A DNA stretch of 64,000 nt, taken from the NCBI GenBank assembly GCA_002269645.1, contig NIVC01000162.1, forward strand, positions 124,001-188,000, written 5' to 3'. The position numbers and the translations under genes are program-made. A model generated the notes under the pieces. That model ran no database searches, had not been told where the DNA came from, and saw only the letters and a program-made list of their open reading frames with translations. Within the stretch, counting starts at the first letter, position 1; each line of letters begins with the position of its first letter. Of the stretch, positions 761-64,000 are shown in pieces. The DNA comes from Macrostomum lignano. Taxonomy: Eukaryota.

Positions 761-761
761 G

Positions 762-8935: not shown

Positions 8936-9284
8936 AGCGTCTTTAGGATTATTAGGATAGGATTAGTTTAGGATGAATTTAATGTATCACTTACTAGGGT
9001 GTAGGCTACGTGTGCATTAACGCATCAATTTGAAAAATTAAGAATTACGAAGCCAGAAATGGCTAAGGAATAGAAATAGGGATAGAATAACTTATAAGCA
9101 GTAATTTTTCAGCCCTATTGCAATTGCAAATCATACTTTTAATAATATTTAATTAGCAAATTAAAACTGCAAGATTCTAACGGTCTTATATATGAACTTA
9201 GAAGAACTGTAGTCTTAATGATTATGCATGTACCATTGTAATAATTGATTAAAATTGTAGCAGATTAAAACTGATAAAAAACTT

Positions 9285-40172: not shown

Positions 40173-41028
40173 TTTAGGTTGAATGCCTCAAAGGTCCTGA
40201 AGTTAAATTACTTTACTTATTCATACCTTTTTTAAACATTACTGCAAAAACAGACAATTGTATAAAAACAAACAATATTACATTAAATTTTGCATTCTTG
40301 TTTTTTAATTTACTTTCTTTTTTCAAAAGTTGTATTTCTTTTATGTTTGTATAATTTTGTTTTGGCTTTTTGATTTTTTCATATTTGGAAGCACATTCGG
40401 AAATTCAGAAAATAAAATTTCCAAATCCAAAGCATTCAGATTTCTAAAAAAGTGAGACATTTTTTGGATTCGGATTCCAAATCTGAATATTCAGATCCAT
40501 CACTAATGCCCAACCTTAAAATTTCACCTATCCGGTGCAACTTAGTTTTGTCTAGATTAGTGACTTAGTTTCTCCTAATCACAACTTAGTTCCTCTCAAT
40601 TGCAACTTAGTTCCCCCAATTACAACTTAATTTTCACTTTGTATAAGACTTTTTTATTGCCTTTTTCTATTTTCTTCTCTTTCCTCTTTCCCTCTCTTTT
40701 CCCTTCCTTCTTTTTCTTTTTTCTTCTCCTTCCTTTCTTCCCCCAATTTTTCATTTTTTGCATTTTTAAATTTGCAAATTACATTGGCCAGTAGCCATTT
40801 CACTCGTCTAGTTTAGATGGGTCAGATGAGTGTTGGGCATGTATGAAAACAGTGCCAAAATGAGTGTATCTATAAAGCCTTTTTGAAACATACCTTATTA
40901 AAATGTTTTTTTTTCTATTTTGGTTTCTTTGTTTTTTTATTATTTATGTAAGTTTTTCCCTTTTCTTTATTTTTTTCTATGTTTAATCTGTCTATAATTT
41001 TTATTGCTTTTGTCTTATGTTCTATTAT

Positions 41029-41668: not shown

Positions 41669-42461
41669 ACCTATTTTAACCTTTGGGACTTGTTTGATTG
41701 GTTTTGTAACATACCTACTTTGGCCTCCTTGTTACTTAGATTGGCTTGGTGATCCAGACTAGATATTATATTTAAAGCCTTTAAGTTACTAGATAATTAA
41801 CAAAGCTAGCTAAAACTAAAGCCACCTTTATTATTTCTGTCTGTTATCTATAGACTATAAGGTTAGATTCTTTTTTAGGGAATTTATGCTACTAGGCAAA
41901 TTATATTATATTATATTTAATATAAAGTGTATAATGTCTCTTCATGTATCTGAGCAATGCATTATGTTGTCTTTAGTGGAAGTAGAATCTGCTTTCAAAG
42001 GCTCTACTCTAATGCTATATTAAGGTAAGCATTTTGCTAATATATATTCATATATATATATATATATAGTTTCAACTTTCAATATGTTAAATTGAAATGA
42101 ATATTCACTTAGAAGAAAGTTGCTTTCTAGTTTTGGTATTAATAGTTTTTTATTGTTTTAATGTAGTAAGTATTTTATTAAATAACTGATCACTAGCACC
42201 TGGCTACACACTGGAGCACTGGCACCTAGATACACACACTGAGCATTGGTACCTAGATACACACACTAGTCACTGGCACCTGGATACACACACGGATCAC
42301 TGGCACCTGGATACACACTTTAAGCATTGGTACCTGAATACACACACTAAGCACTGGCACCTGGATGGATACACACACTGAGTACCGACCCCTCTAGTTC
42401 GTTATTAATATTAATCGCGAGTTTATTAAGAGTTGGCATATTCATCCTGCCCCACCGAAAG

Positions 42462-45400
42462 CCGGCAGGCTGCCTGCATCAGCCAGGCGGCGTCATCAGA
42501 GCGCTGGCAATGGCACCAGCAGCAGCGGCTCCGGCATCAGCAACCATTACTGTTGAATCGCGCGCAGCATCCAATACAGTCGCAGCTGGCATCTGTACTG
42601 CTGATCCGCGGCCTGCACTCGAGCTGCTGTCATCGCACTGGCGATGAGATCAAAAACAAGCCGCCGCCGCCGGCTTCGCCGCCAGCAAAGACGCAGTCGC
42701 AGCCGCCGACGGCTCGGCCGTCACTGCCTGCCCGAATCTGGCACGAGATTCTGCACTATTGGAACGGCTTCCGCCTGCTAGCCTTGGAGACTCGGATCGC
42801 CCTGCGAATCAGCTTGAAGTACATGCGCGGCGCCACCATCTCTAGACGGGAGCGGCGCCACTTGGTTCGCACAGTGGCCGACTTGTTCAGAATGGTGCCC
42901 TTCTTGTTCTTCATTGTAATCCCGTTCATGGAGTTCCTGCTGCCATTCTATCTTAAATTCATGCCATTCATGCTGCCGAGCACGTTCAAGGAGAAGGACA
43001 AGGAGGCTGAGAAGTTGCGCATTAAGCTCAAGGCCAAGCTGGAGACGGCCAAGTTTCTGCAGGAGACTCTTTATGAAGGCTTTCAAGCGAAGACTACGGT
43101 AAAGCGAGCAGGGCTTGCCACTCTTATAGATTGTCCAGAACCCCATCGTCACTCATACTCTTGGTCACAGCCCCTAATCACAGTCACCAGTCACAACCCC
43201 CAGTCAGTCCCACAATCACAGTCCCCAGTCACAGGCCCCTATCACAGTCCCCAGTCACAGGCCCCTATCACAATCCCCAGTCACAGGCCCCTATCACAGT
43301 CCCCAGTCACAGCCCCCAATCACAGTCACCTATCACAGTCCCCAGTCGCAGTCTTCAGTCCCAGTTTACAGTCACAGTCACACCTTCCGTCACAATACTT
43401 AGTTCCAGTAATAGTCCCAGTAATGATTCTCAGTGACCGTCCATCACAGCCCCAGTCACAGTCCTAGTCCTCAGTCACTGTCAGTCACAGTCCTAGTCCT
43501 CAGTCACAACCAGTAAAACCCCAACTGTCGCCCAACCAGGACAAGTCCAATCGCGAAGCCCTGGCCGATTTTCGCCGCTTCATGCAAAAGTGCACAACGG
43601 CGAGTCGCTATGCAACTACAGACGAGCTGCTGCGCTTCTCCGCCCTATTTGCCGACGAGTTGACGCTCGACAATCTCGAACGGCCACAGCTGATGGCCAT
43701 CTGCAAACTGTTGGACATGGCCGCCGTCGGGTCCAAAGCCATGATCCTGCTGCAGCTGGAGCTGCGGCTCCGTCAGCTGCACACTGACGATTTGATGATT
43801 CGCGACGAGGGCGTCGACCGACTGAACGTGACGGAGTTGCAGGCCGCCTGTCGGGCCCGCGGCATGCCGGCTCTGGGCGTGTCCGAGGATCGGCTGAGGG
43901 AGCAGCTGAGCCAGTGGCTTGATCTGCACCTGGTGCACAGCGTGCCGGTCTCCCTGCTGCTGCTGTCCAGGCTGCTGCACTTCCCCGACAGTGTCGATGC
44001 AGAGGAGAGGCTGCGCAAGGTGATTGGCAGCCTGCCAGAGCAGGCGATTCGCTCCGCCGAGGCGTCCAGCTCCGAGGCCGACAGCCGCACCCGATTGGAG
44101 GCGTTGAAGAGCCGTGACCGGGCAATCCGCTCCGAGGAGGCCGAGATTAAGAAGACGCAGAAGCAGAAGAAAAAGCATCAACAGGAAGAGGTGGCGGATG
44201 TGCTCACGACTGCTGACTCTGCCGAGAGGCTGCGCGATCCGGCCGAGGCGGCTGGAGCGACCACTGGCCGGTCAGCGACAGCCGCCGGCGACGCCGCGTC
44301 TGACGGAGCCGACATTGACGTCGGCGCCGCGGATCTACAAGCGCTAGAGTCGGCCATCGACGAGGTGTCGGCAAAAGCGCTGGACGAGGAGGAGATTCGC
44401 GAACTGAAGGAGGAGCTGAGCGAGTACTTCAGCGGCCTGGCCGACGCCCCCATCGTCGGCGACGTCAGAAGGGAGCGAAGCAAGGAAGAGAAACGGGTGG
44501 GTGATGCTTTTGGGCTCTGGAGTGACCCGGAGTGACCTTTTGTGCTCTGCATTGACCCGGAGTGATCTTTTATGCTCTGGATTGACCCGGAGTGACCTTT
44601 TAGGCTTTAGATTGACCCGTGGTGACCTTTTGGGCTCTGTATTAACCAGAGTGACCTTTTAGGCTCTTGATTGACCCAGAGTGACCTTGATTGAGCCAGA
44701 GTGACCTTCTAGGCTCTTTATTGACTTGAAGTGATATTTTGGGCGCTGGATTGACCCAAAGTGCCCTTTTCGGCTCTTAGTTGACCCAGAGTGACCTTTT
44801 ACGCACTCATGCAAACGCTCACTCAGGGTCAGGCGTGTATACACTGTACATTGGGGGTTGGCCCTCATGCATGTGGATTTAGTGTAGCCGCTGCTTTGCT
44901 CAATCCAAAGTTGTGCCTTTAATCTCTGCCGCACCGCACAGGCCGCTAAGCTGCTGTCAGCCAAGGTGGACAGGCTTCTGCATGAGATGGACGGCATGTT
45001 TGACAAGGTCTACTCAGAGAAGGAGGCCCTTGAGCGGCGGCTGCACAAGGCCGAGCGAGACCAGGCGGAGCTCAGCAACGACGCCGCCGAATCCTCGGTC
45101 GACGACGCCACGGACATGGAGCGGCAGCTAGCGAAGCAGATCGCCAAGCACCGCGAGCAGGTGCTGTCAATGAACGACATTTTATTGGCCCTGCGCCGGC
45201 TGCAGAAAATGCCTGACGACGACAAATGGGAGCGAATACTGCAGGTGCTCGACGAGGACAAGGATGGCAAAATCGAGGTGCAACACGTTGTCAAGGTGAG
45301 GCCCGAAGCTCTGACTGGAGGTCGAGTTACTTTAACTAAAAAATTCAGTTCGAGGCACAAGTTTGAAACCAAAGTGCCAGTTTGAAACCAAAGTGCCAGT

Positions 45401-48287: not shown

Positions 48288-50654
48288 CTACAGCTCCACT
48301 TTTGGCTCGGGCATCTGCTGATCCGTCTCCAACTCCGAATGGTTGTATCCGGGCGGTTTCTCCTCCTGTTGCTGCTCCTGCGGCTTAATCACAATTACCT
48401 GGTTCCGCTTGCGGTCGGCTAGCTTCTTGTGCACCAGCAGCGCGCCGTACATTGCCAGTTCCAGGATCTCAACTAGCGTCACGATTGATGCACCGATCCA
48501 TAGGCCTGAGAGAATTGATTGCTAATTGGTGTATATTCAATTTGTGGAATTGGCGCTCAGTGGCTTCTGTCTAGCTGTAATTATAACCTCCAAATAGTAA
48601 CAATATCAATCTTGAAAGGTGCGCAACAAAAAGTTTTCTCCAGTATTCTTAAACTTTAAACTACTTGAAGGTATTTTATAATGAAGGAGAAAGGCGTTTT
48701 GGTGTTTTTTCATTACCTAAAATTCCGCCCAAATCCGAAAAGAAATTTCTCAGCGGATAGGCCCAACTCTCGATGCTCATTTGCACGATCAGGTCCCTTG
48801 GATACAGATCTAGAACTCCGGCGTAATATTTGACGCGACTTTCGTAGTTGCTGACCAGATCTTTGAGTCCCCGCACGTCCAAGCCCCTCGCCTTGGCCTC
48901 GTTCAGCGCTTCCATGGCCAGATTGGACACCGCCTTGCCAGAATATTTCACGCTGTTCGGCCAATGGTAGTAGCGAGGCATCACTTCGTGCGATTTGACC
49001 CGGCACAGCACCGGGCAGCCGTGGGTGTCCACTCCCTCTCTGTTCTGCCTGTCCAGCACTCGCTGATAGCAGTCCAGGCGGGCGATGGTGCCGTTGTACA
49101 TGTCGTAGTTGGTGGCGACATAATCCATCAGAGGGTATTTGTACCAGCTGTCGTTGCGGATAGTGTAGTAGGTGTAGCTCGACGTTGGCCTTCTGTAAAA
49201 GATGTCCCGAAACAAGACGTGCTCGTTGATGTCGTGACAGACGCCTGGCTGCGCCATGTAGTACAGATCGGCCGGCTTGGGCAGGTGAGTGGCCAGGCAG
49301 CCGCAGGTGTCCAAGTACTCTTGCTGCATGATGCGCACGCGGCAGTCTTCGGTGCTGCCACGGAAGGTTTCATTCTCTGGCCCAGTCAGCTGGCTGTAGT
49401 CGGTGATGTAGGTTGCGTTGGGCAGGCTCTCCAGGCATCGATAGCTGCTCCGGTCGACTTTTTCCTGTATGGAAGTGTCAATCACCGCCTCGGTTTTGTA
49501 CTTGAGCGGCGACATCACGTGCGGTCCGTTCATGTTTGGCTTCACGCCTGTTGTAAATTTGGGGTGAGGTGGTTAGATTATCCGGTTGGTTTTGTGTAGA
49601 GAAACCGGCTTGCAAACCAGCATGCCTTACGCACCTCTTGGATGCAGCACCACCTTCATTCCTGGTATATCGTCGATCTCCTCTTCGTCAGTAAAGAATG
49701 ACGAACTGTATGTGTACATGAGCAGATAAAGTCCGTTGCCGGGCCCGGCCCTGACCACCGTATTGTTAAGCGGCGCGAACGTCATGCACTTAAACAGCTC
49801 GTCGTCCTTGTAGATGGTGAAATTCAAATAACTGCAGGGAATCGAGTTGAATCGGCAGAGCAGGACAATCTCGTACGGGTCGGGTAGTTGTTTTGACCTT
49901 AAATTTTTAATAAAACAGCGATCTAAAGACTAAGTAAGTGATTACGCATTAATGGGCACCATGTAAAGGTGTTTCTTTACTATGTAAGTGCAGTTTTAAC
50001 GGTCTTCAACGGTAATCTTAATTCATTTTGACATCCTGTTTCTAAGACGTACAAAAATTATTGTCCAACTGTCACTAGATTTTGGTGAGCCAGCGACCAT
50101 GCATCCACGCATAGCGGCCTGACTCTGGCTCACCTGTATGCGATCTTGTTTAGAGCCAGTTTACCGTGCCGATAGCTGCTGTATGGATTCACCGGCACGC
50201 TAGCGTTCATGTCCGTTTGGTTGAGCAGGTGAAAGAACCGGGACACGTCGTAGATCATGTCCACCAGACCGCGCGCTCGACCAGGCACTGCCACGGGGCT
50301 TGGCACCGGGTCATAGCCGTAGGTGACGCTCAGATAGTTCGTCGAACAGATGGTCACGTCGGGAAATTCGAAGAAGTCCGTGCGAGCCTCCAACTCTGTG
50401 CTAACCGGATAGGAGGTGTACTGCTGCACCAGCATGCTGAGATGCAGAATGAAGCCTACGCACACTCCGACGACCACCAGGGCCCAAAGGACGCGCTGGA
50501 CTCCGGAGCCCTGGCTCAGTCGGAAGATGCCGTGGCTGCTGGCCAGCTGCTGCTGCTGCTTCGTCGGCTGCTGATCCTCGATGCTGTCCTCGTTCCCGAA
50601 AGCCGCTTGCGCTGTGCGAACATCAGGCCTCGAGTTTATCGCCGAGCGTAGCAT
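48288..50654 (-). CDS. DEG/ENaC-family (amiloride-sensitive/acid-sensing-like) sodium channel subunit, 4 exons, about 610 aa
   Basis: Exons 50654-50134, 49897-49635, 49547-48717, 48505-48288 in frame. N-terminal SHG motif, TM1, FPDVTICSTN, CMTF..GPGNGL, GMKVVLHP, Cys-rich thumb, and SDLGGILG|LWIGASIVTLVEILE (TM2, GAS belt). The start Met is tentative. Confidence 0.93.
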
Positions 50655-51606
50655 AGTTACGCAATTCAGAGACTGTTGCGCACTTAGCCTGTGATGGGTT
50701 AACCCGCTGGAATCCAATGGGGCAATCTGGGACCATTTGATCTCGGCCTACCAGCTAAATACTTTCTCAAATGTTTGCCGGTGTTGCCAAGACGACCAGC
50801 TCCAATCTAAACGATAGCTGAATGCAACAACAACTTGTCAATCAAAAAGCTGTTCGCAAAGAAATTTGAAGTTTCGTTTGACACCTGATCTCTATGAATT
50901 ACGATTTTAGAGGTTTTATATCCGACCGAAGAGCCAAACTTTATGAATCAGTTTCAGTGGCTGTTCTTTAGCTCTGCTTTGAACAGAATCTATTCACCAC
51001 AGGTTCTTTGAACTGTCGCTGGCATTCGATCTTTAGTCAAAGTTTGCCACCTCTTTGAAATCAAAGACTGATCTATCTGACTTTGTGCTAGCAGTTCTTT
51101 TATTATACAAAGGACTTCATGGCGCATCTCAAGACAATATGAATCTGATTATTGAATCAGCTTGATGAAAATCAAAAAATAGATTTTTTGAAATTTTACG
51201 AGTGGAGGGTTGTTTTAAAAGTACAGATAATTTTTTTCATAACTCGAATTGAACTTTTTCCCTTGAAATGGGAAAAGTTGCCAATTCTTAACAAAATTGC
51301 TTATAAGTTTTATAAAATATTAAAAAATTCTGCCTGCGCTGTGTGCTCTCTAAAATATGCAGGGTCTCTCCTCCTATTTCGGCCATAGACAACTGCTTGA
51401 CCAATGTATTCTTTGGGACTGGCCATTGACGTGAAGTGTTCCAATTGTCATTTTCTTCCCCGCCTATTTCGGCCATAGACGATTCAATCAGCAGCTAACC
51501 TTCCATTATTAAGACCACAGATTATATATTACCTCAGTCTGCCTGCTAGAGAATGCACTGTGGGGGTTAGGCACGCTAGGGCAGTTATAAAAATGTCTGT
51601 ATGAGC

Positions 51607-52180: not shown

Positions 52181-52780
52181 ATTTGAGCCACAGGTTATAT
52201 TACCTAGATGGTGTACTTCAGCCGCCTAGCGACAGCGCAAAAACCCCGGGTTTTGACCATAGACTGCAGCTTCTGCTGCTCTCAAGACATTACCTCTGGG
52301 TTTTCGGGGCCGAAAAACCGTAACAATTTTTAATCTGGACTGTCATGTAAAGATATCACAGCAATACATGCAGGCTGATTGAAGTTGAAACTGAAGCTAT
52401 ACTTGATAAGTTCACCCATTCAGCTAGAGGTTGTGCCAAAATTGTCGTAACTTCAATCAACCCTCGTAGTTTGATAGGCTTGATAGGTTTGATAGGTAGA
52501 AGAAATCTTATAATCGAAATAGAATTTAAATGATGTAGCTGTTATAGTCTGAATCACTTTCTGCAGAACTACAGACTTATTTATTTATTTATGTATTTAT
52601 TTCAAAAAATAGACATGACTCTTACTGTGTAACAGAATCCATATGATTCCGACAGGGTTTTGTTTAAATAATCGCAGGGTGTATATAAATAAAACAAAGC
52701 ACTCGCCGCCACCACCACAAGCATTGGATAATTATTTGCTTTCCCTATTATATGGTTTCGATCCCATGACCATCATGCAG

Positions 52781-54358
52781 TCAGCCCTTGTGCAGGGTGC
52801 ACAGCTTCGGCATCGGGCAGGGCGGACTGCTGCACTCCGACTTGCTGATGCAGTTGCCGCACCGGTGCGTGCGCACGTAGCTTTTGCGCGTCTCCTTGAC
52901 CTTGCCGTCTGGCAGCTTCTGCCGCGTGATCTTCGGCTGCATGCACGAATTGCAGGCGTAGCACTTTCTGGTGCACACGGTGCTTCCGCCGGATGTTGTA
53001 CAGTTGGGCTTCAGCTCGCAGCTGGACTGGTTGTAGCACTTCCACCTGAGGGGTTGTGGAATACGGCGCTTTGTTTAAACTCCGGACTGAATGATTGATT
53101 GTACCGGCATTGGAATTTGCAAATTTCTATGGACTTCACTCACGGCATGAGGACGATCTGCATTCCCTTGCTCGGCAGATTCAACACTTTTTTCTTGCGG
53201 ACAGGTGTCATGATGTTCTTCTTCTTCTGCTCTTGCGGCTGGTCCACGCGGTCAGCTGAAATATCAGCCAGGGCATGAGCCATGGTAAATAGCATTGGAT
53301 TGCTAATCTATCCATGGTAAATAGCACTGGATTGCTAATCTATCCATGGTAAATAGCACTGGATTGCTAATCTATCCATAGTAGATAGCATTGGATTGCT
53401 AATCTATCCATGGTAAATAACATTGGATTGCTAATCTATCCATAGTAAATAGCACTGGATTGCTAATCTATCCATAGTAAATAGCACTGGATTGCTAATC
53501 TATCCATGGTAAATAACATTGGATTGCTAATCTATCCATAGTAAATAGCACTGGATTGCTAATCTATCCATAGTAAATAGCACTGGATTGCTAATCTATC
53601 CATGGTAAATAGCACTGGATTGCTAATCTATCCATGGTAAATAGCACTGGATTGCTAATCTATCCATGGTAGATAGCACTGGATTGCTAATCTATCCATG
53701 GTAAATAGCACTGGATTGCTAATCTATCCATGGTAGATAGCATTGGATTGCTAATCTATCCATGGTAAATAGCATTGGATTGCTAATCTATCCATGGTAA
53801 ATAGCATTGGATTGCGAATCTATCCATGGTAGATAGCATTAGATTGCTAATCTATCCATGGTAGATAGCACTGGATTGCTAATCTATCCATGGTAAATAG
53901 CACTGGATTGCTAATCTATCCATGGTAAATAGCACTGGATTGCTAATCTAGACATGGTAAATAGCATTGGATTGCTAATCTATCCATGGTAAATAGCATT
54001 GGATTGCTAATCTAGCCAACATCGTGGAGGACGGAATGGATTGGATTGCTAATCTATCCAACATCGTGGAGTACGAAATGGATTATTGGATTGCTAATCT
54101 ATCCAACATAATGGAGTACGAAATGGATTATTGGATTGCTAATCTAGCCAACATCGTGGAGTACGAAATGGATTGGATTGCTAATCTAAATATCCAAAGC
54201 TTCCGGAGGCAAGGCGTACAGCAAAGATAAAAATCGAGGCTCTCACCAACTGAAGTTGCTGGCCGCAGATGAACTTGCGCTTTCACCACCTCCATGGGAA
54301 GCGATGAGGCGCCCAGCATCATCGCGGTGACCAGGCAAAACGCCAGCAGGTATCGCAT
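52781..54358 (-). CDS. Secreted basic cysteine-rich peptide precursor of unrecognised family, 3 exons, 162 aa
   Basis: Exons 54358-54247, 53255-53144, 53045-52781 join in frame. Signal peptide MRYLLAFCLVTAMMLGASS, basic clusters KKK and RKKK, and a 12-Cys C-terminal domain. Confidence 0.8.
53285..54190. repeat. 32-bp minisatellite (ATGGTAAATAGCACTGGATTGCTAATCTATCC) followed by 45-48-bp units with the same core
   Basis: Fills intron 1 of the Cys-rich gene. Confidence 0.95.
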
Positions 54359-55129
54359 TTCGATGCTGTCCTAGAGCGACTCAAAATACAGCAATTGAAT
54401 TGCTGCTTTGAGTAATTGAACACGACTCAAGGAACTCTAGCAAGACAACGGAAAACCGTGATTCAGTTGCGAGTTAGCAAAACTGTCATTAACTCACTCA
54501 GTCCCGCTGAGAAATCTTTCCGGTGTAAAAAAACCCGAGGCTGAGACCGAGCTTTAATGCAGCATAGAGGCTGCATGGTCTGGTTTGCTCATCTGCCACC
54601 CTGAGTACATAAGCTATTGTGGCATATTGGGCACAGTGCGCAGTATGAGCACAGTGTGCCATTGTTTGAGTCCACTGTACAATTCCTAACTCGATGTTGG
54701 CCCAGCTGGATGTTGACACTCGCGCCCGAAGCACGTTTTAGTCTGCGCATACAATTAATGCGAAGCAAACGCCTTAGACTAGCCTAAATAGCTCTTTAAT
54801 TTGAACTATTCCTCGCGCACATAATCTGCAACATCTGCAACCGTCTACTAATATAGTAGACAAAATAGCGAATGTCTATGGTTTTGAATTTAAAGAACAT
54901 TTTGGCGGCCAGTTTGATCGTATTAACAGTAGAACTACCAAGGGGGTTTTCCCCCTGATAACTTTTTTGCTGCGCCGGAACGGAGCAACGCAGGCACACG
55001 AAATTCAATAAGATGGGCCAACCTTTTGTTGCGCACCTTCTCAAACAAAAATCATGTCACCCGCCCTCCAGACCGTCGAGATATTCGATGATTCTTTCGA
55101 AAGGTCGGATTTTTCCATAAGCGCTAGTG

Positions 55130-55400
55130 TATTCAGTACACCTCTGTGCGCCAATCAGCCCTGCGCCTCAGTGCAGCCTTGGCAAGTCTCCAAATTTCAT
55201 CAGCACGTCGACCACATGTGTCTGCATCAGATGTGACTTCGCTGATCACTGGTCTTCACCCAGACGGAGCTTCTGGACCTTCAACAGGTGGAACCAGGTG
55301 TCATCTGTTGAAGTTTCTAACGGCGTCGGGGTGATGACTGAATGCTTGAGAGACTAGCTGAGGATGTCCAGCAGTTGAGGCTTGCCCACTGTCGAGGCTT
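55130..55400 (-). mobile_element. Possible degraded non-LTR (RTE-like) retrotransposon 3' fragment
   Basis: Fragments TWFHLLKVQKLRLG and EIWRLAKAALRRRADWRTEV loosely resemble RTE ORF C-termini; weak. Confidence 0.25.
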
Positions 55401-56118
55401 GATCAGCAAAACTCGAGAAATTTGCAACAGTGTGTCCATAGTCACCTTGATATCTCAGCAACTCCCCCTTCAGCCATGGCATCTCAGAAAACTCCCCTTT
55501 GAGCCATTGGCATCCCCCTAAGACTGCAAAGAGCAGTCATTTTCTGAGTCTCATCCCTCAGAATAAGTTCCAGATTCTTAATCAAGTGTTCGTATGGCCC
55601 TGTGTGTAGCCAGGCCGCTAAGCTGGATCTGCACTTTTGCACCAAAGGTTCGTCGTCTCGGACTGGAGATTAGCTTGAATTATTTGAAGTAATTCACCTT
55701 TTATGAGGCCAAAAATTTAAAAACAATTCATGACGTTAACACTGATATTAAACTCTTGCAAGAATAGATAAGGTTTACAAATAGCCGTTCATTTCTCTAA
55801 AAAATGATTGACACTGAAATTTCCGTCCCGAGCTTCACAAATTCTATGAACCAATCGAATCATGAAGCTTTTAATTTCAGTGCATCAAATTCAATAAATA
55901 TTGGAACTAAAGAATAAAATCTGTTTGGGATTACTGAGTATTTGTATTTGAGTACACAATTGTATTAATATTTATTTGTTTAATAATTTAATCCGAACAA
56001 AGAATACAGTGTCCAATTAATAGTTGAGCTGGAGTTCGTAACAGCTATAAGGCTATCAGATTTGAATCCGCTTTAGGCATTGTTTTGCACTTTAATTGTA
56101 TAGTGGAGTCGCAATCAA

Positions 56119-56537
56119 TCATTCTCTCTCGACGCTCTGACCCTTCATGGCGAAGCTCTTGACCTCCTGGCCCTCCTGGATGAGGGCACACAGGCCGCAG
56201 AAAAACCAGACGCAGAAGTCGCCAATAAAGCTGCCATCGATGCCCTGACGCTCCCTGATCTTGCCGCGCACGATGGGGCCGAGGATGAAGCCGAGGCCGC
56301 AGGCCATGCCCAAGGCGCACAGCATGCAGCTGTCGCCAACGGCCTCTGCATTCTTGCCGAACGTGTAGCACGGCACAAAATAGGTGATGATGCACAGGCC
56401 TGCAGGAGAGTGCACGCATTCAAACAAATTTGTTCGCCAATAGCTAATGAATGAAAGGTGAATCGTTAGTTGGCGAGCTGCCCGGACTTACCGCAATCGT
56501 CGAAGCAGCCGCAGAGTCCGTGCTGAAATTCGCCCAT
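56119..56537 (-). CDS. PLAC8/cornifelin-family cysteine-rich protein, 2 exons, 108 aa
   Basis: Exons 56537-56492 and 56399-56119: MGEFQHGLCGCFDDC|GLCIITYFVPCYTFGKNAE..RGKIRERQGIDGSFIGDFCVWFFCGLCALIQEGQEV. Confidence 0.93.
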
Positions 56538-57224
56538 GTTGCTGCAGCAGAGTTGTTAGTTGCGAACTAATTAGCGAGTGCGCGCCTGTATAGAGCTTGG
56601 TCCAATTTGCCCGAGCCGCAGTCTAAGCGTGGCTTGCTGTTGTAGGCCCCATATATATTTCCGCTTCGAATATATGCGCGCCTGAGCCACACTGCCTGTA
56701 CAGCGATAAGTTTTATCGCTGTGCAGCTCGAGGCATGGAGCCGGTCCTCGCTGTTAGAGCAATGGCAATGGGCTCCGATAACACCGCTTGGTGCCGGCGG
56801 TGCCGCCCCAACCCTTCCTCCCTAGCGAGTGTTGGCTTGTTGCACTGCGCCGTTGCTATGGTAACCCCAGCAAGTAAATGTCTCTCCCGCCCTGCTGTCT
56901 CTCCATTTTGTTTTATTTTTATATATCTGCGCAACTGTTTCACATGAATATTTTGTTGCTATTGGTGATGGAAACCACTTGGAGAGAGGGAGAGGTCAGA
57001 TTTTCATTGATAATGAAATTGTGTATTGGAGCTTTGGCTAGTTATGCGCCTATCTGTCTCTGATATCTGACTTAAACCTGTTTCGTTACAGCGAATCACC
57101 ATATATGGTGAAATTCTGTATTCAAGCGCACACAGTCTGCTTTCTCTGCAATGGAGATACTCCAATGAGATTTAGCCTGCCTCGACTGCCCGCAATGCGT
57201 GCCTTCTTAATTGTTTTCAAGCTG

Positions 57225-57990
57225 GAATGGATTGCTAATCTATAGCCTGGCTTATCGTGATGATGGAATAGAATGGATTGCTAATCTATAGCCTGGCTTA
57301 TCATGATGATGGAATAGAATGGATTGCTAATCTATAGCCTGGCTTATCATGATGATGGAATAGAATGGATTGCTAATGTATAGCCTGGCTTATCATGATG
57401 ATGGAATAGAATGGATTGCTAATCTATAGCCTGGCTTATCATGATGATGGAATAGAATGGATTGCTAATCTATAGCCTGGCTTATCATGATGGTGGAATA
57501 GAATGGATTGCTAATCTATAGCCTGGCTTATCATGATGATGGAATAGAATGGATTGCTAATCTATAGCCTGGCTTATCATGATGATGGAATAGAATGGAT
57601 TGCTAATCTATAGCCTGGCTTATCATGATGATGGAATAGAATGGATTGCTAATCTATAGCCTGGCTTATCATGATGATGGAATAGAATGGATTGCTAATC
57701 TATAGCCTGGCTTATCATGATGATGGAATAGAATGGATTGCTAATCTATAGCCTGGCTTATCATGATGATGGAATAGAATGGATTGCTAATCTATAGCCT
57801 GGCCTATCATGATGATGGAATAGAATGGATTGCTAATCTATAGCCTGGCTTATCATGATGATGGAATAGAATGGATTGCTAATCTATAGCCTGGCTTATC
57901 ATGATGGTGGAATAGAATGGATTGCTAATCTATAGCCTGGCTTATCATGATTTATGAAATAGAATGGATTGCTAAGCTATAGCCTGGCTT
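57225..57990. repeat. 46-bp minisatellite (GAATGGATTGCTAATCTATAGCCTGGCTTATCATGATGATGGAATA)
   Basis: About 16 near-identical copies. Confidence 0.97.
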
Positions 57991-58379
57991 ATCCCGGTGG
58001 CTACTGCAGCCTAGAGTTGGGAACTAGCCAATTGACTCAAGGTCAATGGGAGTCTGCAAGGAGATAAGGGTAAATCCCTTATTGGTTGGCTGAGAGCGAC
58101 TCCCTTATCAAATCCCTCCTTCCAGTAACAGGATTTGAGATTTACCACTCTGCTGATTCTTTTAGATATACTGAACTGGACGCACAGTTTTTTTAGTGTT
58201 ACTAAAAGTAGTCTGTTTTGTTAGATTCTAATTGAATTTTCTTTTCTTTTTTTGCGCAATATCAGCGCAAAAGAGAGGGAGCTGTGTTTGTTTGCACTGG
58301 ACACGGCGGGTGAAAGGTGAAGCAGAGCCATTACGAGCGTAGCGATCGAAAAATCAATCAATAAATAATCAGTCAGTCG

Positions 58380-58730
58380 ATTCGTTAATAAATCAAACAG
58401 TCAATCAATTCTTTATCAATCAATAGATCAATCAATTATCAATCAATGAATCACTCAACTTTTTCTATCTATCAATCAGTTACGCTCGAAATCAACCAAC
58501 CAACCAACCAATCAATCAATCAACTAATGAATCAATCAATTAACCAATCAATCAATCAATCAACCAATCAATCAATTAACCAACCAATCAATCAACCAAC
58601 CAACTAATCAACCGATAAATCAATCAATCTACCAATGAATCAATGAATGAATCAATCAATCAGTCAATCAGGCAATGAATCAGTCATACAATAAATAAAT
58701 AAATCAATCAATGAATCAGTCAGTTAATCC
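58380..58730. repeat. Degenerate (AATC)n microsatellite
   Basis: AATC/AACC/AATG tetramers. Confidence 0.9.
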
Positions 58731-59194
58731 GAGCATGAATTCCACTAGTCTGATTTCATCCCGTGCATTTACATTGTTGCGTCAGCTCAAGCATCCCCTA
58801 TAAACGAGCTAAGCAGCCTCAGCTGAGCCCTTAGCTTCGAAGAACACTATTTTTAGCTTTGAATTGAGCTGCAACTTGTAAATAATAGCAAATGTGTCTA
58901 TTATTCCGAGGTTGAATAACTGGTTTATCTACCTGGATATTTTTACAAGTATAGCTAGGAATGACAGCGAAGGTTTTTTATGCAGTAGAATTGCAAATAT
59001 TTCAATATTTAATATTAACTCTATGAGAGTTATTGCTTAGTTTGCTAAGACAGCAAAGCAGTTCTCTGAAGTATAAGAATAATTGGCTTTTTGAAGTCAT
59101 ATATGCAAGTACATTATAAGCAACAGGGCAAGCTCGGTCAATACCTGCTCACAAGGACGCAAGGGTAAGTAAGTAGGACCAGTTTGGGTCTTAG

Positions 59195-59630
59195 CTGACT
59201 CCGCCAGATCATGATAGGCCTAGCTAGGTCATGACCCGGCGGAGTCATCTATGACCCAGCTATGACCCAGGACTAGATAGGTGATAGATGACTCCGCCAG
59301 GTCATGATAGGACTAGCTGGGTCATAGATGACTCCGTCAGGTCATGATAGGACTAGCTGGGTCATAGATGACTCCGTCAGGTCATGATAGGACTAGCTGG
59401 GTCATAGATGACTCCGTCAGGCCATGATAGGTCTAGCTGGGTCATAGATGACTCAGTCAGGCCATGATAGGTCTAGCTGGGTCATATATGACTCAGTCAG
59501 GCCATGATAGGTCTAGCTGGGTCATAGATGACTCAGTCAGGCCATGATAGGTCTAGCTGGGTCATAGATGACTCAGTCAGGCCATGATAGGTCTAGCTGG
59601 GTCATAGATGACTCCGTCATGTCATGATAG
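59195..59630. repeat. 40-bp minisatellite (GTCATGATAGGACTAGCTGGGTCATAGATGACTCCGTCAG)
   Basis: Tandem copies; internal hairpin GTCAT-AG-ATGAC. Confidence 0.95.
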
Positions 59631-59641
59631 GCTTGGCAACA

Positions 59642-61934
59642 CTATAGTAATTGGCTGGACTCCAGCTGCTCATAGGTGATTAATCTCGGGAATTCCTTGT
59701 ACGCATCGAACGTTGGCATTCGCTGCTTGTGGTAGCCGAGGTGCGTGAACTGGTGAATGGCCACCGTCCTGTTTGTTATGAAGAGTTCGTCGCTTTTCTC
59801 AAAGCCCATCTGCTGCAGTTGAAGGCACACTCGCTGGCTTGGTGAGAGCCCTCCGGAGTGCCTTTGGAGACGTGGCGCCACTGCGGAGTGAGAGTGCGTT
59901 GGACTGTGCTTGCGAATGGCTAGATTAGCAATCCATTCTATTCCTTTATCTAATGTAGGCTAGATTAGCAATCCATTCTATTCCTTTATTCATGTAGGCT
60001 AGATTAGCAATCCATTCTATTCCTTTAATAATGTAGGCTAGATTAGCAATCCATTCTATTCCTTTACCCAATGTAAGCTAGATTAGCAATCCATTCTATT
60101 CCTTTATCCATGTAGGCTAGATTAGCAATCCATTCTATTCCTTTTTTCATGTAGGCTAGATTAGCAATCCATTCTATTCCTTTATCCTATGTAGGCTAGA
60201 TTAGCAATCCATTCTATTCCTTTATCTAATGTAGGCTAGATTAGCAATCCATTCTATTCCTTTACCCTATGTAGGCAAGATTAGCAATCCATTTTAATCC
60301 TTTATCTATGTAGGCTAGATTAGCAATCCATTCTATTCCTTAATCCGTGTTGGCTAGATTAGCAATCCATTCTATTCCTTAATCCGTGTTGGCTAGATTA
60401 GCAATCCATTCTAATCCTTAATCCGTGTTGGCTAGATTAGCAATCCACTTTATTCCTTTATCCATGTAGGCTAGATTAGCAATCCATTCTATTCCTTTAT
60501 CCAATGTAGGCTAGATTAGCAATCCACTCTATTCCTTTATCCAATGTAGGCTAGATTAGCAATCCATTCTATTCCTTTATCCAATGTAGGCTAGATTAGC
60601 AATCCATTCTAATCCTTTATCCATGTAGGCTAGATTAGCAATCCATTCTATTCCTTTATCTAATGTAGGCTAGATTAGCAATCCATTCTAATCCTTTATC
60701 CATGTAGGCTAGATTAGCAATCCATTCTATTCCTTTATCCTATGTAGGCTAGATTAGCAATCCATTCTATTCCTTTATCCTATGTAGGCTAGATTAGCAA
60801 TCCATTCTAATCCTTTATCAATGTAGGCTAGATTAGCAATCCATTCTAATCCTTTATCCTATGTAGGCTAGATTAGCAATCCATTCTATTCCTTTATCCA
60901 TGTAGGCTAGATTAGCAATCCATTCTATTCCTTTATCCTATGTAGGCTAGATTAGCAATCCATTCTATTCCTTTATCCTATGTAGGCTAGATTAGCAATC
61001 CATTCTATTCCTTTATCCATGTAGGCTAGATTAGCAATCCATTCTATTCCTTTATCCTATGTAGGCTAGATTAGCAATCCATTCTAATCCTTTATCCATG
61101 TAGGCTAGATTAGCAATACATTCTATTCCTTTATCTAATGTAGGCTAGATTAGCAATCCATTCTAATCCTTTATCCATGTAGGCTAGATTAGCAATCCAT
61201 TCTAATCCTTTATCAATGTAGGCTAGATTAGCAATCCATTTTAATCCTTTATTCATGTAGGCTAGATTAGCAATCCATTTTAATCCTTTATTCATGTAGG
61301 CTAGATTAGCAATCCATTCTAATCCTTTATCAATGTAGGCTAGATTAGCAATCCATTTTAATCCTTTATTTATGTAGGCTAGATTAGCAATCCATTCTCC
61401 AATTCTAAAGCACCGCATATCACTCAGCAAGCAATTTATTTTAACAACAAGAGAAGCCCCTCACTACTCTTGCAGCGGCCGTAGATGCCGCTCCGCGGGT
61501 TAATCTTTGGCGAGAAGTAGGTCTCGTTGAGCATGACAACCGTCGGGTTAGCTGCATCCCTCTTCCACAGGTCGAACTGTTTCGTGAGCATTTCCGGGCC
61601 CGTAGTGGAGAAAATGGCTGAAACAAGAGTCGGGTGATCGGGCTTTGAAGAGAAGTTCTGTCCAATAATTCCTGGAAAAAAAAACAATTTTGCGACTCAC
61701 AAACAGGAAAAAGGAAATTCCTTTTAGCCGTGCTCGGTCGGAACACGAACCGGATAACTTGGCGAAAGAACGGGTGCCCTGGCGTGCAGCCCATGGCCGA
61801 GTTCATGGCTGAGTACTGCCTGCCGTGTAGAAACTGAGTCTGGTGCCGCCGCTCGCTGTCCAAGAAGCAGCTGTGCGGTGCCAGGCTGGGCAGCAGCGGC
61901 GCATGGCAGGTCATGTCTAAGTCCATGTACAGCC
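59642..61934 (-). CDS. DXD glycosyltransferase of GT32 type (SUR1/OCH1/alpha-1,4-transferase-like), 3' part; upstream exons not in view
   Basis: GLYMDLDMTC (DXD), NSAMGCTPGHPFF, FSTTGPEML, ETYFSP and AIHQFTHLGY in order. Acceptors at 61934 and 59880, donor at 61465; the junction near 61750-61660 is unresolved. Confidence 0.8.
59918..61400. repeat. 39-40-bp minisatellite (GCTAGATTAGCAATCCATTCTATTCCTTTATCCATGTAG) filling the last intron of the glycosyltransferase
   Basis: About 37 copies by length; the reverse complement shares 24 bp with the 57225-57990 unit. Confidence 0.97.
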
Positions 61935-62087
61935 CTGTGCAAGCAGCGGGCGGATGCTGGGAGTTGGCATTCAATATCGGATGAGCGACGCCCAACGCTC
62001 TCGAATTCATGCAAATTTCAGAGGAAGATGCAGGTCTTTGCCCAGCCGAAATTCATGTCACACGCTTTGGTCGAGAGGTTTACCAGT

Positions 62088-62985
62088 TAGACTGGCAGTT
62101 TTACCCAATAAACTGGCAGTTTTACCCAATAGACTGGCAGCTTTACCCAACAGACTGGCAGTTTTACCCAACAGACTGGCAGTTTTACCCAACAGACTGG
62201 CAGTTTTACCCAACAGACTGGCAGTTTTACCCAACAGACTGGCAGTTTTACCCAACAGACTGGCAGTTTTACCCAATAGACTGGCAGTTTTACCCAATAG
62301 ACTGGCAGTTTTACCCAATAGACTGGCAGTTTTACCCAACAGACTGGCAGTTTTACCTAATAGACTGGCAGTTTTACCCAATAGATTGGCAGTTTTACCA
62401 AATGGACTGGCAGTTTTACCCAATAGACTGGCAGTTTTACCCAATAGACTGGCAGTTTTACCCAATAACTGGCAGTTTTACCCTATAGACTGGCAGTTTT
62501 ACCCAATGGACTGGCAGTTTTACCTAATAGACTGGCAGTTTTACCCAATAGACTGGCAGTTTTACCCAATGGACTGGCAGTTTTACCCAATGGACTGGCA
62601 GTTTTACCTAATAGACTGGCAGTTTTACCCAATAGACTGGCAGTTTTACCCAACAGACTGGCAGTTTTACCCAACAGACTGGCAGTTTTACCCAACAGAC
62701 TGGCAGTTTTACCCAATAGACTGGCAGTTTTACCCAATAGACTGGCAGTTTTACCCAACAGACTGGCAGTTTTACCCAACAGACTGGCAGTTTTACCCAA
62801 TAGACTGGCAGTTTTACCCAATAGACTGGCAGTTTTACCCAATAGACTGGCAGTTTTACCCAACAGACTGGCAGTTTTACCCAACAGACTGGCAGTTTTA
62901 CCCAACAGACTGGCAGTTTTACCCAACAGACTGGCAGTTTTACCTAATAGACTGGCAGTTTTACCTAATAGACTGGCAGTTTTAC
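62088..62985. repeat. 21-bp minisatellite (AGACTGGCAGTTTTACCCAA(T/C))
   Basis: About 43 copies by length; source of the DWQFYP and GKTASLL ORFs. Confidence 0.97.
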
Positions 62986-63189
62986 TCTGACGAACTGATG
63001 AACTTTTGAGTGGTTGGCTAAACCTGCCACTTCTGACTTACTCTATCGATTTTCGCTGGCACTGACCCTGAGCCTAACCTGTACTCGCCTGCTCAATTTT
63101 GTACACTCCACCCATCCCATTCATTGTTGCTTGAGGCGCTCTCACACTCTCACAAGCCATAAATTTTTCACAGCATCCACCACCCTCTC

Positions 63190-63513
63190 CGGTGTTGAGA
63201 ATGCAACAGCACTTCATCTGTGAATGCCCCGCCTTTCCTGAGGACAAGGCTCACCTACCTCCGCCCAAACCCGGACCTCTCCAACGTTTTCAGGCCACCT
63301 CGTCCGCTACCTGAGGGCTACCGGGCGAGCGACCACCCACCTCCTTGACTCTCCGGAAGGGGGCCCGCGCTGTGGACACCGGCACCACTGGATCACCCTT
63401 CGCGGCACCGCAACCACAAGCTCTGTGGTCGCCAGGGGTTAGCGGAATTGGTGACAACGCCTTCCCGCTGTATCCGGATGCCCGAAGCCCCCTGCAGCTG
63501 AGTCAAGTAAGTC
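63190..63513 (+). mobile_element. 5'-truncated non-LTR retrotransposon 3' end
   Basis: Frameshifted [29 protein letters not shown] (CCHC-region C-terminus typical of LINE ORF2), followed by a UTR ending AGTCAAGTAAGTCA. Confidence 0.7.
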
Positions 63514-63524
63514 ACCAGCTCACA

Positions 63525-63960
63525 GCACCCACCACCCCACAGAACCCCTCACCCCACAGCACCCACCACCCCACAGCACCCACCACCCCACAGAACCCCT
63601 CACCCCACAGCACCCACCACCCACAGCGCCCACCACCCCACAGCACCCACCACCCCACAGCACCCACCACCCCACAGCGCCCACCACCAACAGCATCCAC
63701 CACCCAACAGCGCCCACCACCCCACAGCACCCACCACCCCACAGCACCCACCACCCCACAGCGCCCACCACCAACAGCATCCACCACCCAACAGCACCCA
63801 CCACCCCACAGCACCCACCACCCCACAGCACCCATCACCCCACAGCACCCACCGCCATACATAGGAGCCACAACGCCACAGAACCCCAACCACCCCAAAG
63901 CACCCACCACTCATAGCACCGACACAACCGTCACATAACACACAGCACCCACCACTTACC
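63525..63960. repeat. CA-rich low-complexity minisatellite (CACAGCACCCACCACCC)
   Basis: Tandem 15-18-bp units. Confidence 0.9.
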
Positions 63961-64000
63961 GCCATATTTGTACAATATAAGATAGCGAATGGCGTCGGAT

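What the first reader, a model, noticed from the sequence alone, without database searches (positions are those of the whole stretch)
53285..61400. Four different minisatellite units share one core that looks like a tRNA-Ser(GCU) anticodon arm
Seen: the 32-bp array (53285-54010), the 45-48-bp units (54010-54190), the 46-bp array (57225-57990) and the 39-40-bp array (59918-61400, opposite strand) have different linkers, but all carry TGGATTGCTAATCTA. The last two share 24 identical bp (GGAATAGAATGGATTGCTAATCTA). That is roughly 80 copies in 8 kb. In the 46-bp unit the core folds as ATGGA-TTGCTAA-TCTAT: a 5-bp stem with one G.U pair and a 7-nt loop U-U-GCU-A-A. Known: the eukaryotic tRNA-Ser(GCU) anticodon arm is (A/T)TGGA-CTGCTAA-TCCA(T/A), differing at only two positions. 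Inference: a conserved, possibly mobile core (tRNA/SINE-derived seed, protein-binding site or structured intronic RNA) is repeatedly re-amplified with new linkers. No D- or T-arm is present, so these are not tRNA genes.
Basis: partly seen in the sequence, partly recalled or inferred. Interest (0 to 1): 0.72.

Follow-up and report, generated by a model that had tools for sequence, protein, structure and literature searches.

The report
Flatworm minisatellite family sharing one core
The repeats are real and form one family of non-coding tandem repeats in the flatworm Macrostomum lignano with an unusually uniform 15-base core, but nothing beyond a short chance-level resemblance links them to a tRNA, so this is a mildly curious instance of an ordinary kind of repeat.

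Summary
Observation confirmed. TGGATTGCTAATCTA occurs 76 times exactly (0 expected) in arrays of 32, 42/45, 46 and 39/40 bp. The window is Macrostomum lignano contig NIVC01000162.1; published tandem plus simple repeats make up 15% of that genome, and arrays cover 24% of this window.

All three array sites are present at the same positions in the two other homeologous genome copies. Copy numbers there range from 12 to 71 units, changed by block duplication and deletion, which is ordinary minisatellite turnover.

The linkers are not unrelated. The A, B and C linkers each align significantly with the D linker, so this is one family descended from a D-like unit of about 39 bp.

The core is a real low-variation block. 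Of 299 units, 282 have it exact, and no core variant has spread within an array, whereas linker variants have (p about 5e-6).

A related array (core with 1-2 mismatches, 20/35-bp units) lies on an unlinked contig, so the family is dispersed. It is the only such array among 89 sampled.

The tRNA idea is not supported. There are no ARAGORN or Rfam tRNA hits, the similarity stops at 15 of 17 bases, and the 5-bp stem exists in only two of the four unit types.

Verdict: an ordinary minisatellite family that shares a core. Why the core stays uniform is unresolved.

The parts
53280..54010 (+). Array A: 22-23 units of 32 bp (TGGATTGCTAATCTA + TCCATGGTAAATAGCAC/T). It lies in intron 1 of a 162-aa secreted-protein gene and is antisense to that gene.
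   Evidence: Gene model (L002 12180-13757, which is window 52781-54358, - strand).
54000..54188 (+). B units: two of 42 bp and two of 45 bp (core + G/TCCAACATCGTGGAGTACGAAATGGAT[TAT]), followed by a terminal core. They are contiguous with array A. In homeolog L003 this unit type has expanded to about 55 units, interspersed with A units.
57225..57993 (+). Array C: 16.7 units of 46 bp (core + TAGCCTGGCTTATCATGATGATGGAATAGAA). It is intergenic, about 690 bp upstream of the PLAC8 coding start and downstream of the glycosyltransferase gene.
59918..61398 (-). Array D: 37.6 units of 39/40 bp (core + GCCTACAT[T]GGATAAAGGAATAGAA), with 79- and 198-bp higher-order periodicity. By my reading of the splice sites it fills about 93% of the last intron of a Gly_transf_sug gene, and the core is sense to that gene. 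Its unit is the one whose linker aligns with all the others.
52781..54358 (-). Host gene of A/B (162 aa, signal-peptide-like start MRYLLAFCLVTAMM, no Pfam hit). The product length is the same in all three homeologs, although the gene spans 1578 bp in L001 and L002 but 3620 bp in L003.
56119..56537 (-). PLAC8-family gene lying between arrays A/B and C. It was used to identify the organism and to fetch the homeologous loci.
59642..64000 (-). Gly_transf_sug glycosyltransferase gene (370 aa), which runs off the end of the window. Two unrelated minisatellites (21 bp at 62088-62985, 17 bp at 63513-63910) also lie inside the gene's span, so array D is not unusual in its position.

Best explanation
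These arrays are non-coding minisatellites of the flatworm Macrostomum lignano. They form one family of tandem repeats descended from a D-like unit of about 39-40 bp.

History at this locus: arrays were seeded at three sites within 8 kb, one of them inverted, without carrying flanking DNA. This happened before the three homeologous subgenomes diverged.

Turnover: each array has since changed by in-register unequal exchange or replication slippage of blocks of one to several units (concerted evolution). This fixed different indel-rich linkers in each array and changed copy number between 12 and 71 units, without affecting the host genes.

Dispersal: a relative of the family with 20/35-bp units sits on an unlinked contig, so the family is dispersed.

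The core: the 15-bp core, which contains the imperfect palindrome GATT-GCT-AATC, is the part of the unit in which new variants arise but do not spread. I take this as position-dependent turnover within selfish or neutral repeat DNA. It does not show that the organism needs the sequence.

tRNA: the 15/17 likeness to the tRNA-Ser(GCU) anticodon arm is coincidence.

Shown: the arrays, their presence in all three homeologs, the block turnover, linker homology, the low-variation core, the unlinked relative, and the absence of tRNA or transposon signatures.

Inferred: the mode of seeding, the cause of core uniformity, and the absence of a host function.
For: Organism and setting:
- The window is identical to NIVC01000162.1 of M. 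lignano.
- Simple and tandem repeats make up 15% of that genome (PMC5730564). Arrays cover 24% of this window and 15.5% of 292 kb of other loci.

Age and turnover:
- All three array sites occur at the same places in L001, L002 and L003. These correspond to the published S/L1/L2 subgenomes (PMC10733133).
- Host protein lengths are unchanged in all three copies.
- Unit-variant maps show that L001 and L002 share a long collinear run in D with block insertions and deletions. L003 is fully turned over, and a 5-unit block is duplicated in its A/B array.

One family:
- The D linker aligns with the A, B and C linkers at p=0.0035, 0.0005 and <0.0005.
- There are no shared flanks or terminal inverted repeats among the arrays.
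- No source of the linkers was found elsewhere in the window or the other loci.

Core uniformity:
- 282 of 299 units carry the exact core, and no core variant occurs in more than 2 units of any one array.
- The CMH test gives p=5e-6.
- An unrelated 21-bp array in the window also shows a quiet block, 15 of 21 positions, p=0.03.

Dispersal:
- The L016 array scores 15.5 against the extended core, versus a null maximum of 12.
- It lies outside the hAT transposon copy at that locus.

tRNA link lacking.
Against: A purely neutral turnover model does not predict where in the unit a variant can spread, yet spread variants avoid the core. The table of singleton versus spread variants, core versus linker, is 10/5 against 8/44, Fisher p=2.6e-4. 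The core is also identical across four unit types whose aligned linkers differ by 9-32%. Some constraint or bias therefore exists that this explanation names but does not identify.

The genome sample is small: 292 kb plus the window, about 0.04% of the assembly. Family size and any association with a mobile element are therefore poorly bounded.

The species' own tRNA-Ser(GCU) and its SINE library could not be examined.
Confidence: 0.6

Rival explanations
1. The core is a sequence-specific site, either for a DNA-binding protein or a structure-prone palindrome. It promotes the exchange or slippage events that build the arrays, or it is kept by selection as a cluster of binding sites. Units with an intact core are therefore preferentially amplified or retained. 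This would be the flatworm counterpart of the 'core' of human hypervariable minisatellites.
For: - Core variants arise (17 of 299 units) but are never amplified within an array, whereas 44 of 104 linker sites carry spread variants.
- The core is identical in four unit types and in all three subgenomes.
- An unlinked array keeps the core with 1-2 transitions.
- The core centres on the palindrome GATT-GCT-AATC (read directly from the sequence; fold).
Against: - 88 of 89 other arrays sampled in this genome expand without this core.
- Copy number varies 12-71 among homeologs with no visible consequence for the host genes.
- A comparable quiet block occurs in an unrelated array.
- In L016 the second core copy in each unit is degenerate (TAGGTTGATAATCTA), so the constraint is not absolute.
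- No binding factor is known, and no literature mentions the motif.
Confidence: 0.2
2. The arrays are expanded subterminal or internal repeats of a non-autonomous DNA transposon, and the core is that element's repeated recognition motif. Dispersal would then be by transposition.
For: - The same window holds a direct precedent. A hAT element at about 7.8-14.1 kb carries a minisatellite (8027-8934) built on CTAAGTCGCA.
- That motif recurs in the element's roughly 290-bp terminal segment (13884-14134, with a solo copy at 39875-40173) and in arrays of other unit lengths in other copies of the element.
- The core family is present on an unlinked contig.
Against: - No shared flanking sequence, terminal inverted repeats or target duplications surround arrays A/B, C, D or L016.
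- There are no single dispersed core copies within 2 mismatches in about 350 kb outside the arrays, apart from one isolated hit in L015 (TGGATTGCTATTTTA); about 0.5 are expected by chance.
- Arrays C and D are inverted, but a coding exon lies between them.
Confidence: 0.1
3. The core derives from a tRNA-Ser(GCU) anticodon arm, through a tRNA pseudogene or a tRNA-derived SINE that seeded the arrays.
For: - The C unit matches the human tRNA-Ser-GCT arm at 15 of 17 positions.
- The L016 variant ATGGGTTGCTAATCCAT also matches at 15 of 17, with different mismatches.
- The B linker contains CGTGGAGTACGAA, against the T-arm sequence CGTGG-GTTCGAA, in collinear order. This gives p=0.01 uncorrected over 12 tests.
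Against: - ARAGORN finds nothing in the window or in 16 loci.
- Rfam finds no tRNA hit at E<=10 in the window region or in the 71-unit L003 array.
- The D linker, the one that aligns with all the others, shows no tRNA similarity on either side (p=0.44 and 0.73).
- The 5-bp stem is absent from the A and D units, and arm-shaped 17-mers occur in two unrelated arrays.
- The chance expectation is about 0.009 per window, so many such matches are expected genome-wide.
- The B-linker match does not survive correction for 12 tests.
Confidence: 0.05

Closest known systems
Core-sharing hypervariable minisatellites of vertebrates (the Jeffreys 33.6/33.15 type; from my own knowledge of Jeffreys et al. 1985)
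   Same: Several arrays have different unit lengths and linkers but share a short core. Copy number varies between copies of the genome. Internal variant repeats are rearranged in blocks, and variability is concentrated towards one end of the array (D arrays of L001 versus L002).
   Different: The core here is AT-rich and palindromic (TGGATTGCTAATCTA), not the G-rich chi-like core. Only four sites are known so far, three of them within 8 kb. No link to recombination hotspots or to a binding protein has been tested.
Transposon-borne minisatellites: subterminal repeat arrays of hAT elements (seen in this very window), and foldback or Tetris-type elements and repeat-bearing MITEs of insects and bivalves (the latter from my own knowledge)
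   Same: A short conserved motif is multiplied with varying spacers and unit lengths at dispersed sites. Arrays C and D are in inverted orientation.
   Different: No terminal repeats, target duplications or shared flanks were found around the arrays. A coding exon lies between the two inverted arrays.
Short euchromatic satellite arrays that spread to new sites without flanks, such as the Drosophila 1.688 family (from my own knowledge)
   Same: Related arrays lie at nearby and distant sites with no flanking homology. Copy number turns over rapidly.
   Different: The units here are 20-46 bp rather than about 360 bp. The route of dispersal (excised circles, template switching) is untested here.
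tRNA-derived SINEs and tRNA pseudogenes
   Same: A 17-base stretch matches a tRNA-Ser(GCU) anticodon arm at 15 of 17 positions.
   Different: No cloverleaf, no A or B box, no tRNA-model hit, and no extension of similarity beyond the arm.

Membership tests
Minisatellite (tandem repeat with 10-100 bp units) | Head-to-tail arrays of 10-100 bp units spanning hundreds of bp to several kb | tested here: met
   Units of 32, 42/45, 46 and 39/40 bp in arrays of 0.2-1.5 kb. The A/B array reaches up to 2.9 kb in L003.
Minisatellite (tandem repeat with 10-100 bp units) | Copy-number and internal-variant differences between homologous copies, arising by block gain and loss | tested here: met
   D has 47/37/41 units, C has 12/16/23 and A+B has 26/26/71 in L001/L002/L003. 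Collinear variant maps show block insertions and deletions.
Core-sharing minisatellite family (Jeffreys type) | Arrays at different loci share a core while the rest of the unit differs | tested here: met
   Three sites in the window plus the unlinked L016 array. However, the linkers within the window are still recognisably homologous.
Core-sharing minisatellite family (Jeffreys type) | The core is less variable than the remainder of the unit | tested here: met
   Non-singleton variable sites: 5 of 60 in the core against 44 of 104 in the linkers, CMH p=5e-6. No core variant is amplified.
Core-sharing minisatellite family (Jeffreys type) | The core acts as a recombination or protein-binding signal | not testable with these tools
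   This needs binding assays, recombination maps or population data.
tRNA gene or tRNA-derived SINE | A cloverleaf or tRNA covariance-model match | tested here: not met
   ARAGORN finds 0 genes. Rfam finds no tRNA hit at E<=10.
tRNA gene or tRNA-derived SINE | Internal promoter A and B boxes, or similarity extending beyond one arm | tested here: not met
   Local alignment to tRNA-Ser-GCT stops at the arm for C, D and B45. Only the B42 linker shows a T-arm-like stretch, at p=0.01 uncorrected over 12 tests. The D linker gives p=0.44 and 0.73.
tRNA gene or tRNA-derived SINE | An anticodon-arm geometry (5-bp stem, 7-nt loop) kept in all copies | tested here: not met
   The geometry is present only in the B and C units, not in A or D. 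The same geometry occurs in two unrelated arrays, and shuffles give a mean of 0.95 per set. The minimum-energy fold is a 7-bp stem with a 3-nt loop.
tRNA gene or tRNA-derived SINE | A match to the species' own tRNA-Ser(GCU) or SINE consensus | not testable with these tools
   No tRNA was found in any fetched M. lignano locus, and no repeat library was available.
Transposon-borne repeat array (hAT subterminal, foldback or MITE type) | Arrays bounded by terminal inverted repeats and target duplications, or by flanks shared between copies | tested here: not met
   Flank-against-flank BLAST gave nothing better than 17 bp at E=0.02. The L016 flank has no match to the window, and the L016 array lies about 8.7 kb outside the hAT copy there.

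The most novel reading that the evidence does not exclude
The 15-18 bp palindromic core ATGG(A/G)TTGCTAATC(T/C)A could be a recognition site for a flatworm DNA-binding or recombination-associated factor. That factor would drive the birth and maintenance of a genome-wide minisatellite family, possibly hundreds to thousands of arrays that fill introns. This would be an invertebrate analogue of the vertebrate minisatellite core and hotspot-motif relationship.
Probability: 0.12. Interest if true: 0.55.

Novelty: new member of a known kind. Interest (0 to 1): 0.27.

Why it matters
M. lignano is a regeneration and transgenesis model whose genome is hard to assemble because of its tandem repeats. A dispersed repeat family with a constrained core would give a concrete handle on how those repeats arise, spread and inflate introns. 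Two of these arrays make up more than 90% of their host introns. The family would also provide a sequence to test for a binding factor.

As it stands, the finding mainly documents ordinary minisatellite dynamics across the three subgenomes and removes a tempting but unsupported link to tRNA.

Tried and rejected
- Translated-array search. The only open frame of the 39-bp unit (WIANLAY...) was used as a protein query to find other arrays in any assembly. 506 candidates shared words, but none scored E<=10.
- Exact scans for two cores 15-40 bp apart. There were 0 hits in JGI metagenome contigs, GTDB prokaryote genomes and IMG/VR.
- A relaxed second metagenome scan. It gave one non-tandem chance hit, L018.
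- Fixed-period slicing of other arrays to compare variation profiles. It failed wherever indels shift the register and was replaced by anchor-based splitting with MAFFT alignment.
- Literature searches. The motif itself gave one irrelevant wheat paper, and 'Macrostomum' with 'minisatellite' gave nothing relevant.
- The idea that 39-46 bp units are dimers of a 20-bp L016-like monomer. Only a CATGGAT 7-mer recurs in the linkers, at p=0.02-0.06 uncorrected, so I did not adopt it.
- Similarity of linkers to the tRNA D-arm and T-arm sides. One of 12 tests reached p=0.01, which is not significant after correction.
- A foldback-element reading of the inverted C and D arrays. I rejected it because the last coding exon of the glycosyltransferase gene lies between them and no shared flanks exist.
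- Stem covariation. The A-to-G and T-to-C differences between the window core and the L016 core both keep pairing through G-T wobbles. However, most transitions would do so, and the rare within-array core variants break pairs as often as they keep them.

Full report
**1. What is in the sequence**

Tandem Repeats Finder reports arrays at four places:
- 53280-54018 (32 bp x 23),
- 53991-54188 (about 45 bp x 4.6),
- 57225-57993 (46 bp x 16.7),
- 59918-61398 (39 bp x 37.6).

The 15-mer TGGATTGCTAATCTA occurs 76 times exactly against 0 in shuffles. All copies lie in these arrays, on the + strand in the first three and on the - strand in the last. Allowing 2 mismatches gives 82 copies.

The short second block consists of 42- and 45-bp units, not 45-48 bp. 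The 46- and 39-bp units share the 24-mer GGAATAGAATGGATTGCTAATCTA. The observation therefore stands, with one small correction.

**2. Organism and setting**

A PLAC8 exon at 56119-56427 matches a Macrostomum lignano protein at 100% identity. The protein is encoded on three contigs of assembly GCA_002269645.1. The window is identical to one of them, NIVC01000162.1, fetched as L002.

All genes near the arrays are on the - strand:
- an ASC/ENaC channel gene (48288-50711),
- a 162-aa secreted-type protein gene (52781-54358), with array A/B in its first intron,
- the PLAC8 gene (56119-56537), with array C about 690 bp upstream of its coding start,
- a Gly_transf_sug glycosyltransferase gene (59642 to beyond the window end), with array D in its last intron.

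Reading the splice sites (my inference), A/B and D each make up more than 90% of their host intron.

Published work states that simple and tandem repeats are 15% of this genome (PMC5730564). By my TRF count, arrays cover 24% of the window (31 arrays) and 15.5% of 292 kb of other loci (89 arrays). Two unrelated minisatellites also lie inside the span of the same glycosyltransferase gene.

**3. Three copies of the locus**

L001 and L003 are the two other copies of this locus, with flanks 93-99% identical to the window. This fits the three homeologous subgenomes S, L1 and L2 described for the sequenced line (PMC10733133).

All three array sites are present at the same places in all three copies, so the arrays predate the divergence of the copies. 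Unit numbers differ: D has 47/37/41, C has 12/16/23 and A+B has 26/26/71 units in L001/L002/L003. The encoded proteins keep the same lengths.

Coding each distinct unit as a letter shows how the arrays change:
- The D arrays of L001 and L002 share a long collinear run interrupted by block insertions and deletions, and they differ mostly towards one end.
- L003 has been completely reshuffled.
- In L003 the A and B unit types are interspersed, and a 5-unit block occurs twice.

This is the classical picture of in-register unequal exchange or replication slippage.

**4. The linkers are not unrelated**

Global alignment of linkers against shuffled controls shows that the D linker is significantly similar to the others:
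- to the A linker (p=0.0035),
- to the B linker (p=0.0005; a D variant shares GCCAACA with B),
- to the C linker (p<0.0005; shared GCC...CAT..GAT.A.GGAATAGAA).

The four unit types are therefore diverged versions of one D-like unit, differing mainly by indels and slippage-type changes. They are not a core re-amplified with new sequence.

The sequences flanking the three arrays share nothing, and there are no terminal inverted repeats. The linker sequences also have no source elsewhere in the window or in the other loci.

**5. The core really is a low-variation block**

I pooled 299 units from the nine arrays (three sites in three copies). Of these, 282 carry the exact core, and the 17 variant cores are scattered. 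No variant occurs in more than two units of any one array.

Sites where a minority base is seen more than once number 5 of 60 in the core against 44 of 104 in the linkers (Fisher p=2.5e-6; stratified CMH p=5e-6). Singleton-only sites are at least as frequent in the core (10 of 60) as in the linkers (8 of 104). Mutations therefore reach the core but do not spread (Fisher p=2.6e-4).

There are caveats:
- The effect is significant in the D and B units, but not in A or C taken alone.
- Some singletons could be assembly errors.
- An unrelated 21-bp array in the window shows a similar quiet block of 15 of 21 positions, p=0.03.
- The core was defined after the fact.

Even so, aligned linkers differ by 9-32% between unit types. 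By my arithmetic from those figures, an unchanged 15-bp run in all four types is unlikely under uniform rates, at roughly 1e-4 before correcting for the choice of position and about 0.005 after.

**6. Is the core confined to this locus?**

Only a small sample could be drawn: 14 other M. lignano loci, 292 kb in total, fetched through PLAC8 paralogues and copies of a hAT transposase.

Thirteen loci and the remaining 55 kb of the window have no array-borne core copy within 2 mismatches. One isolated 2-mismatch hit in L015 is at chance level; about 0.5 are expected.

One locus does carry a relative. L016, on the unlinked 95-kb contig NIVC01003487.1, has an array at 13-622 on the - strand that is cut by the end of the locus. 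Its units are 20 bp (GCTCATGGGTTGCTAATCTA) and 35 bp (GCTCATGGGTTGCTAATCCATAGGTTGATAATCTA). Against the extended core it scores 15.5, compared with a maximum of 12 in 1240 shuffled units. The chance of a match within 1 mismatch among 89 arrays is about 2e-4. The array lies about 8.7 kb outside the hAT copy at that locus.

The family is therefore dispersed. Extrapolating one hit in 292 kb gives a very rough 2600 arrays in the 764-Mb assembly, with a 95% interval of 66-14,600.

**7. The tRNA idea**

The human tRNA-Ser-GCT-1-1 sequence printed in PMC10359600 confirms the arm as ATGGACTGCTAATCCAT. The C unit matches it at 15 of 17 positions. Everything else argues against a tRNA origin:
- ARAGORN finds no tRNA in the window or in 16 related loci.
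- Rfam at E<=10 gives no tRNA hit in 52500-62000 or in the 71-unit array of L003.
- Local alignment to the whole tRNA stops at the arm.
- Of 12 tests of linkers against the sequence on either side of the arm, one reaches p=0.01. This is the B linker CGTGGAGTACGAA against the T-arm CGTGG-GTTCGAA, and it does not survive correction. The D linker shows nothing.
- The 5-bp stem with 7-nt loop is satisfied only by the B and C units. The same shape occurs in two unrelated arrays of the window, and shuffled units give about one per set.
- RNAfold prefers a 7-bp stem with a 3-nt loop at -2.2 kcal/mol, and whole units fold no better than shuffles.
- A match within 2 mismatches to any of about 50 arms is expected about 0.009 times per window. 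Scaled to the number of such windows in the genome (my extrapolation), that is roughly a hundred arrays by chance.
- The core is sense to the host gene in D, antisense in A/B and intergenic in C, which argues against a strand-specific RNA role.

**8. What it most likely is**

This is a dispersed minisatellite family that shares a core and evolves by ordinary concerted evolution. Arrays were seeded at three nearby sites, one of them inverted, before the subgenomes diverged.

The cause of the core's uniformity is not established. I lean towards position-dependent turnover within selfish or neutral repeat DNA. I give about 0.2 to the core being a true protein-binding or exchange-promoting site, about 0.1 to transposon-borne repeats, and about 0.05 to a tRNA or SINE origin.

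A precedent for the transposon route sits in the same window. A hAT element carries a minisatellite built on CTAAGTCGCA, a motif also found in its terminal segment and in arrays of other unit lengths in other copies. No such element could be found around the arrays studied here.

**9. Novelty and interest**

The searched literature does not describe this family or the motif. It is a new member of a well-known kind. Interest is modest. The one non-trivial result is the statistically solid failure of core variants to spread, together with the unlinked relative. A genome-wide census would settle what that means.

Noticed in passing
window 7810-14134, with a solo end at 39875-40173: A hAT-family transposon with a 533-aa ORF at 9285-10886 and further ORFs up to 13242. 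Its 90%-identity protein cluster holds 18 M. lignano member sequences. The element carries its own minisatellite (8027-8934, 21-bp units) built on the motif CTAAGTCGCA. The same motif recurs in the element's roughly 290-bp terminal segment and, with other unit lengths (22 bp, 83 bp), in other copies. This is a transposon-borne minisatellite that shares a core, in the same genome.
   Followed up: partly
L016 13-622 (contig NIVC01003487.1), - strand: An unlinked array of 20- and 35-bp units, each made almost entirely of one or two core-like copies (TGGGTTGCTAATCCA / TAGGTTGATAATCTA / TGGGTTGCTAATCTA). A degenerate copy (TAGATAGCTTATCTA) lies in its flank. The array is cut off by the end of the fetched locus.
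   Followed up: partly
window 53259-54245 and about 59873-61470: Two host introns consist more than 90% of minisatellite. The A/B intron is about 1 kb in two homeologs and about 3 kb in the third, with the protein unchanged. Two other unrelated arrays (62088-62985, 63513-63910) lie inside the span of the same glycosyltransferase gene. Minisatellite expansion appears to be a main determinant of intron length here.
   Followed up: partly
window 59185-59631: A 40-bp array (AGGTCTAGCTGGGTCATAGATGACTCCGTCAGGCCATGAT) lies immediately downstream of the glycosyltransferase stop codon. It begins with a head-to-head inverted junction at about 59185-59310. That palindrome gives weak microRNA-model hits (mir-789, E=0.0012, 34.5 bits against a gathering score of 100), most likely a hairpin artefact.
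   Followed up: no
window 58352-58722: An (AATC)n microsatellite of about 92 copies lies between arrays C and D. Its motif and complement (AATC/GATT) are the two arms of the palindrome at the centre of the core (GATT-GCT-AATC). Whether this is coincidence or a clue to the origin of the core is unknown.
   Followed up: no
window 16129-16277 and 16354-16609; also 40-753 / 1164-1227 and 43164-43379 / 43452-43514: Other neighbouring arrays in the window also share 12-14 bp cores while differing in unit length, and one pair is inverted. Local duplication, inversion and divergence of arrays therefore seem to be general in this genome.
   Followed up: partly
window 54010-54188; L003 about 13254-16174: The B-type linker contains CGTGGAGTACGAA, which resembles the tRNA T-arm/B-box stretch CGTGG-GTTCGAA and lies in collinear order after the anticodon-arm-like core. 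The p-value is 0.01 before correction for 12 tests, so it is not significant after correction. It is the one lead that a check against the species' own tRNA and SINE library should revisit.
   Followed up: partly
window 20566-21396, 42433-45385, 3216-3920: Housekeeping genes are interleaved with the arrays: a large eIF2-gamma-like exon, LETM1, and a La-related-protein-like exon (names for eIF2-gamma and La-related protein are from my reading of the translations; LETM1 has Pfam support). This is a gene-dense region, not heterochromatin.
   Followed up: no
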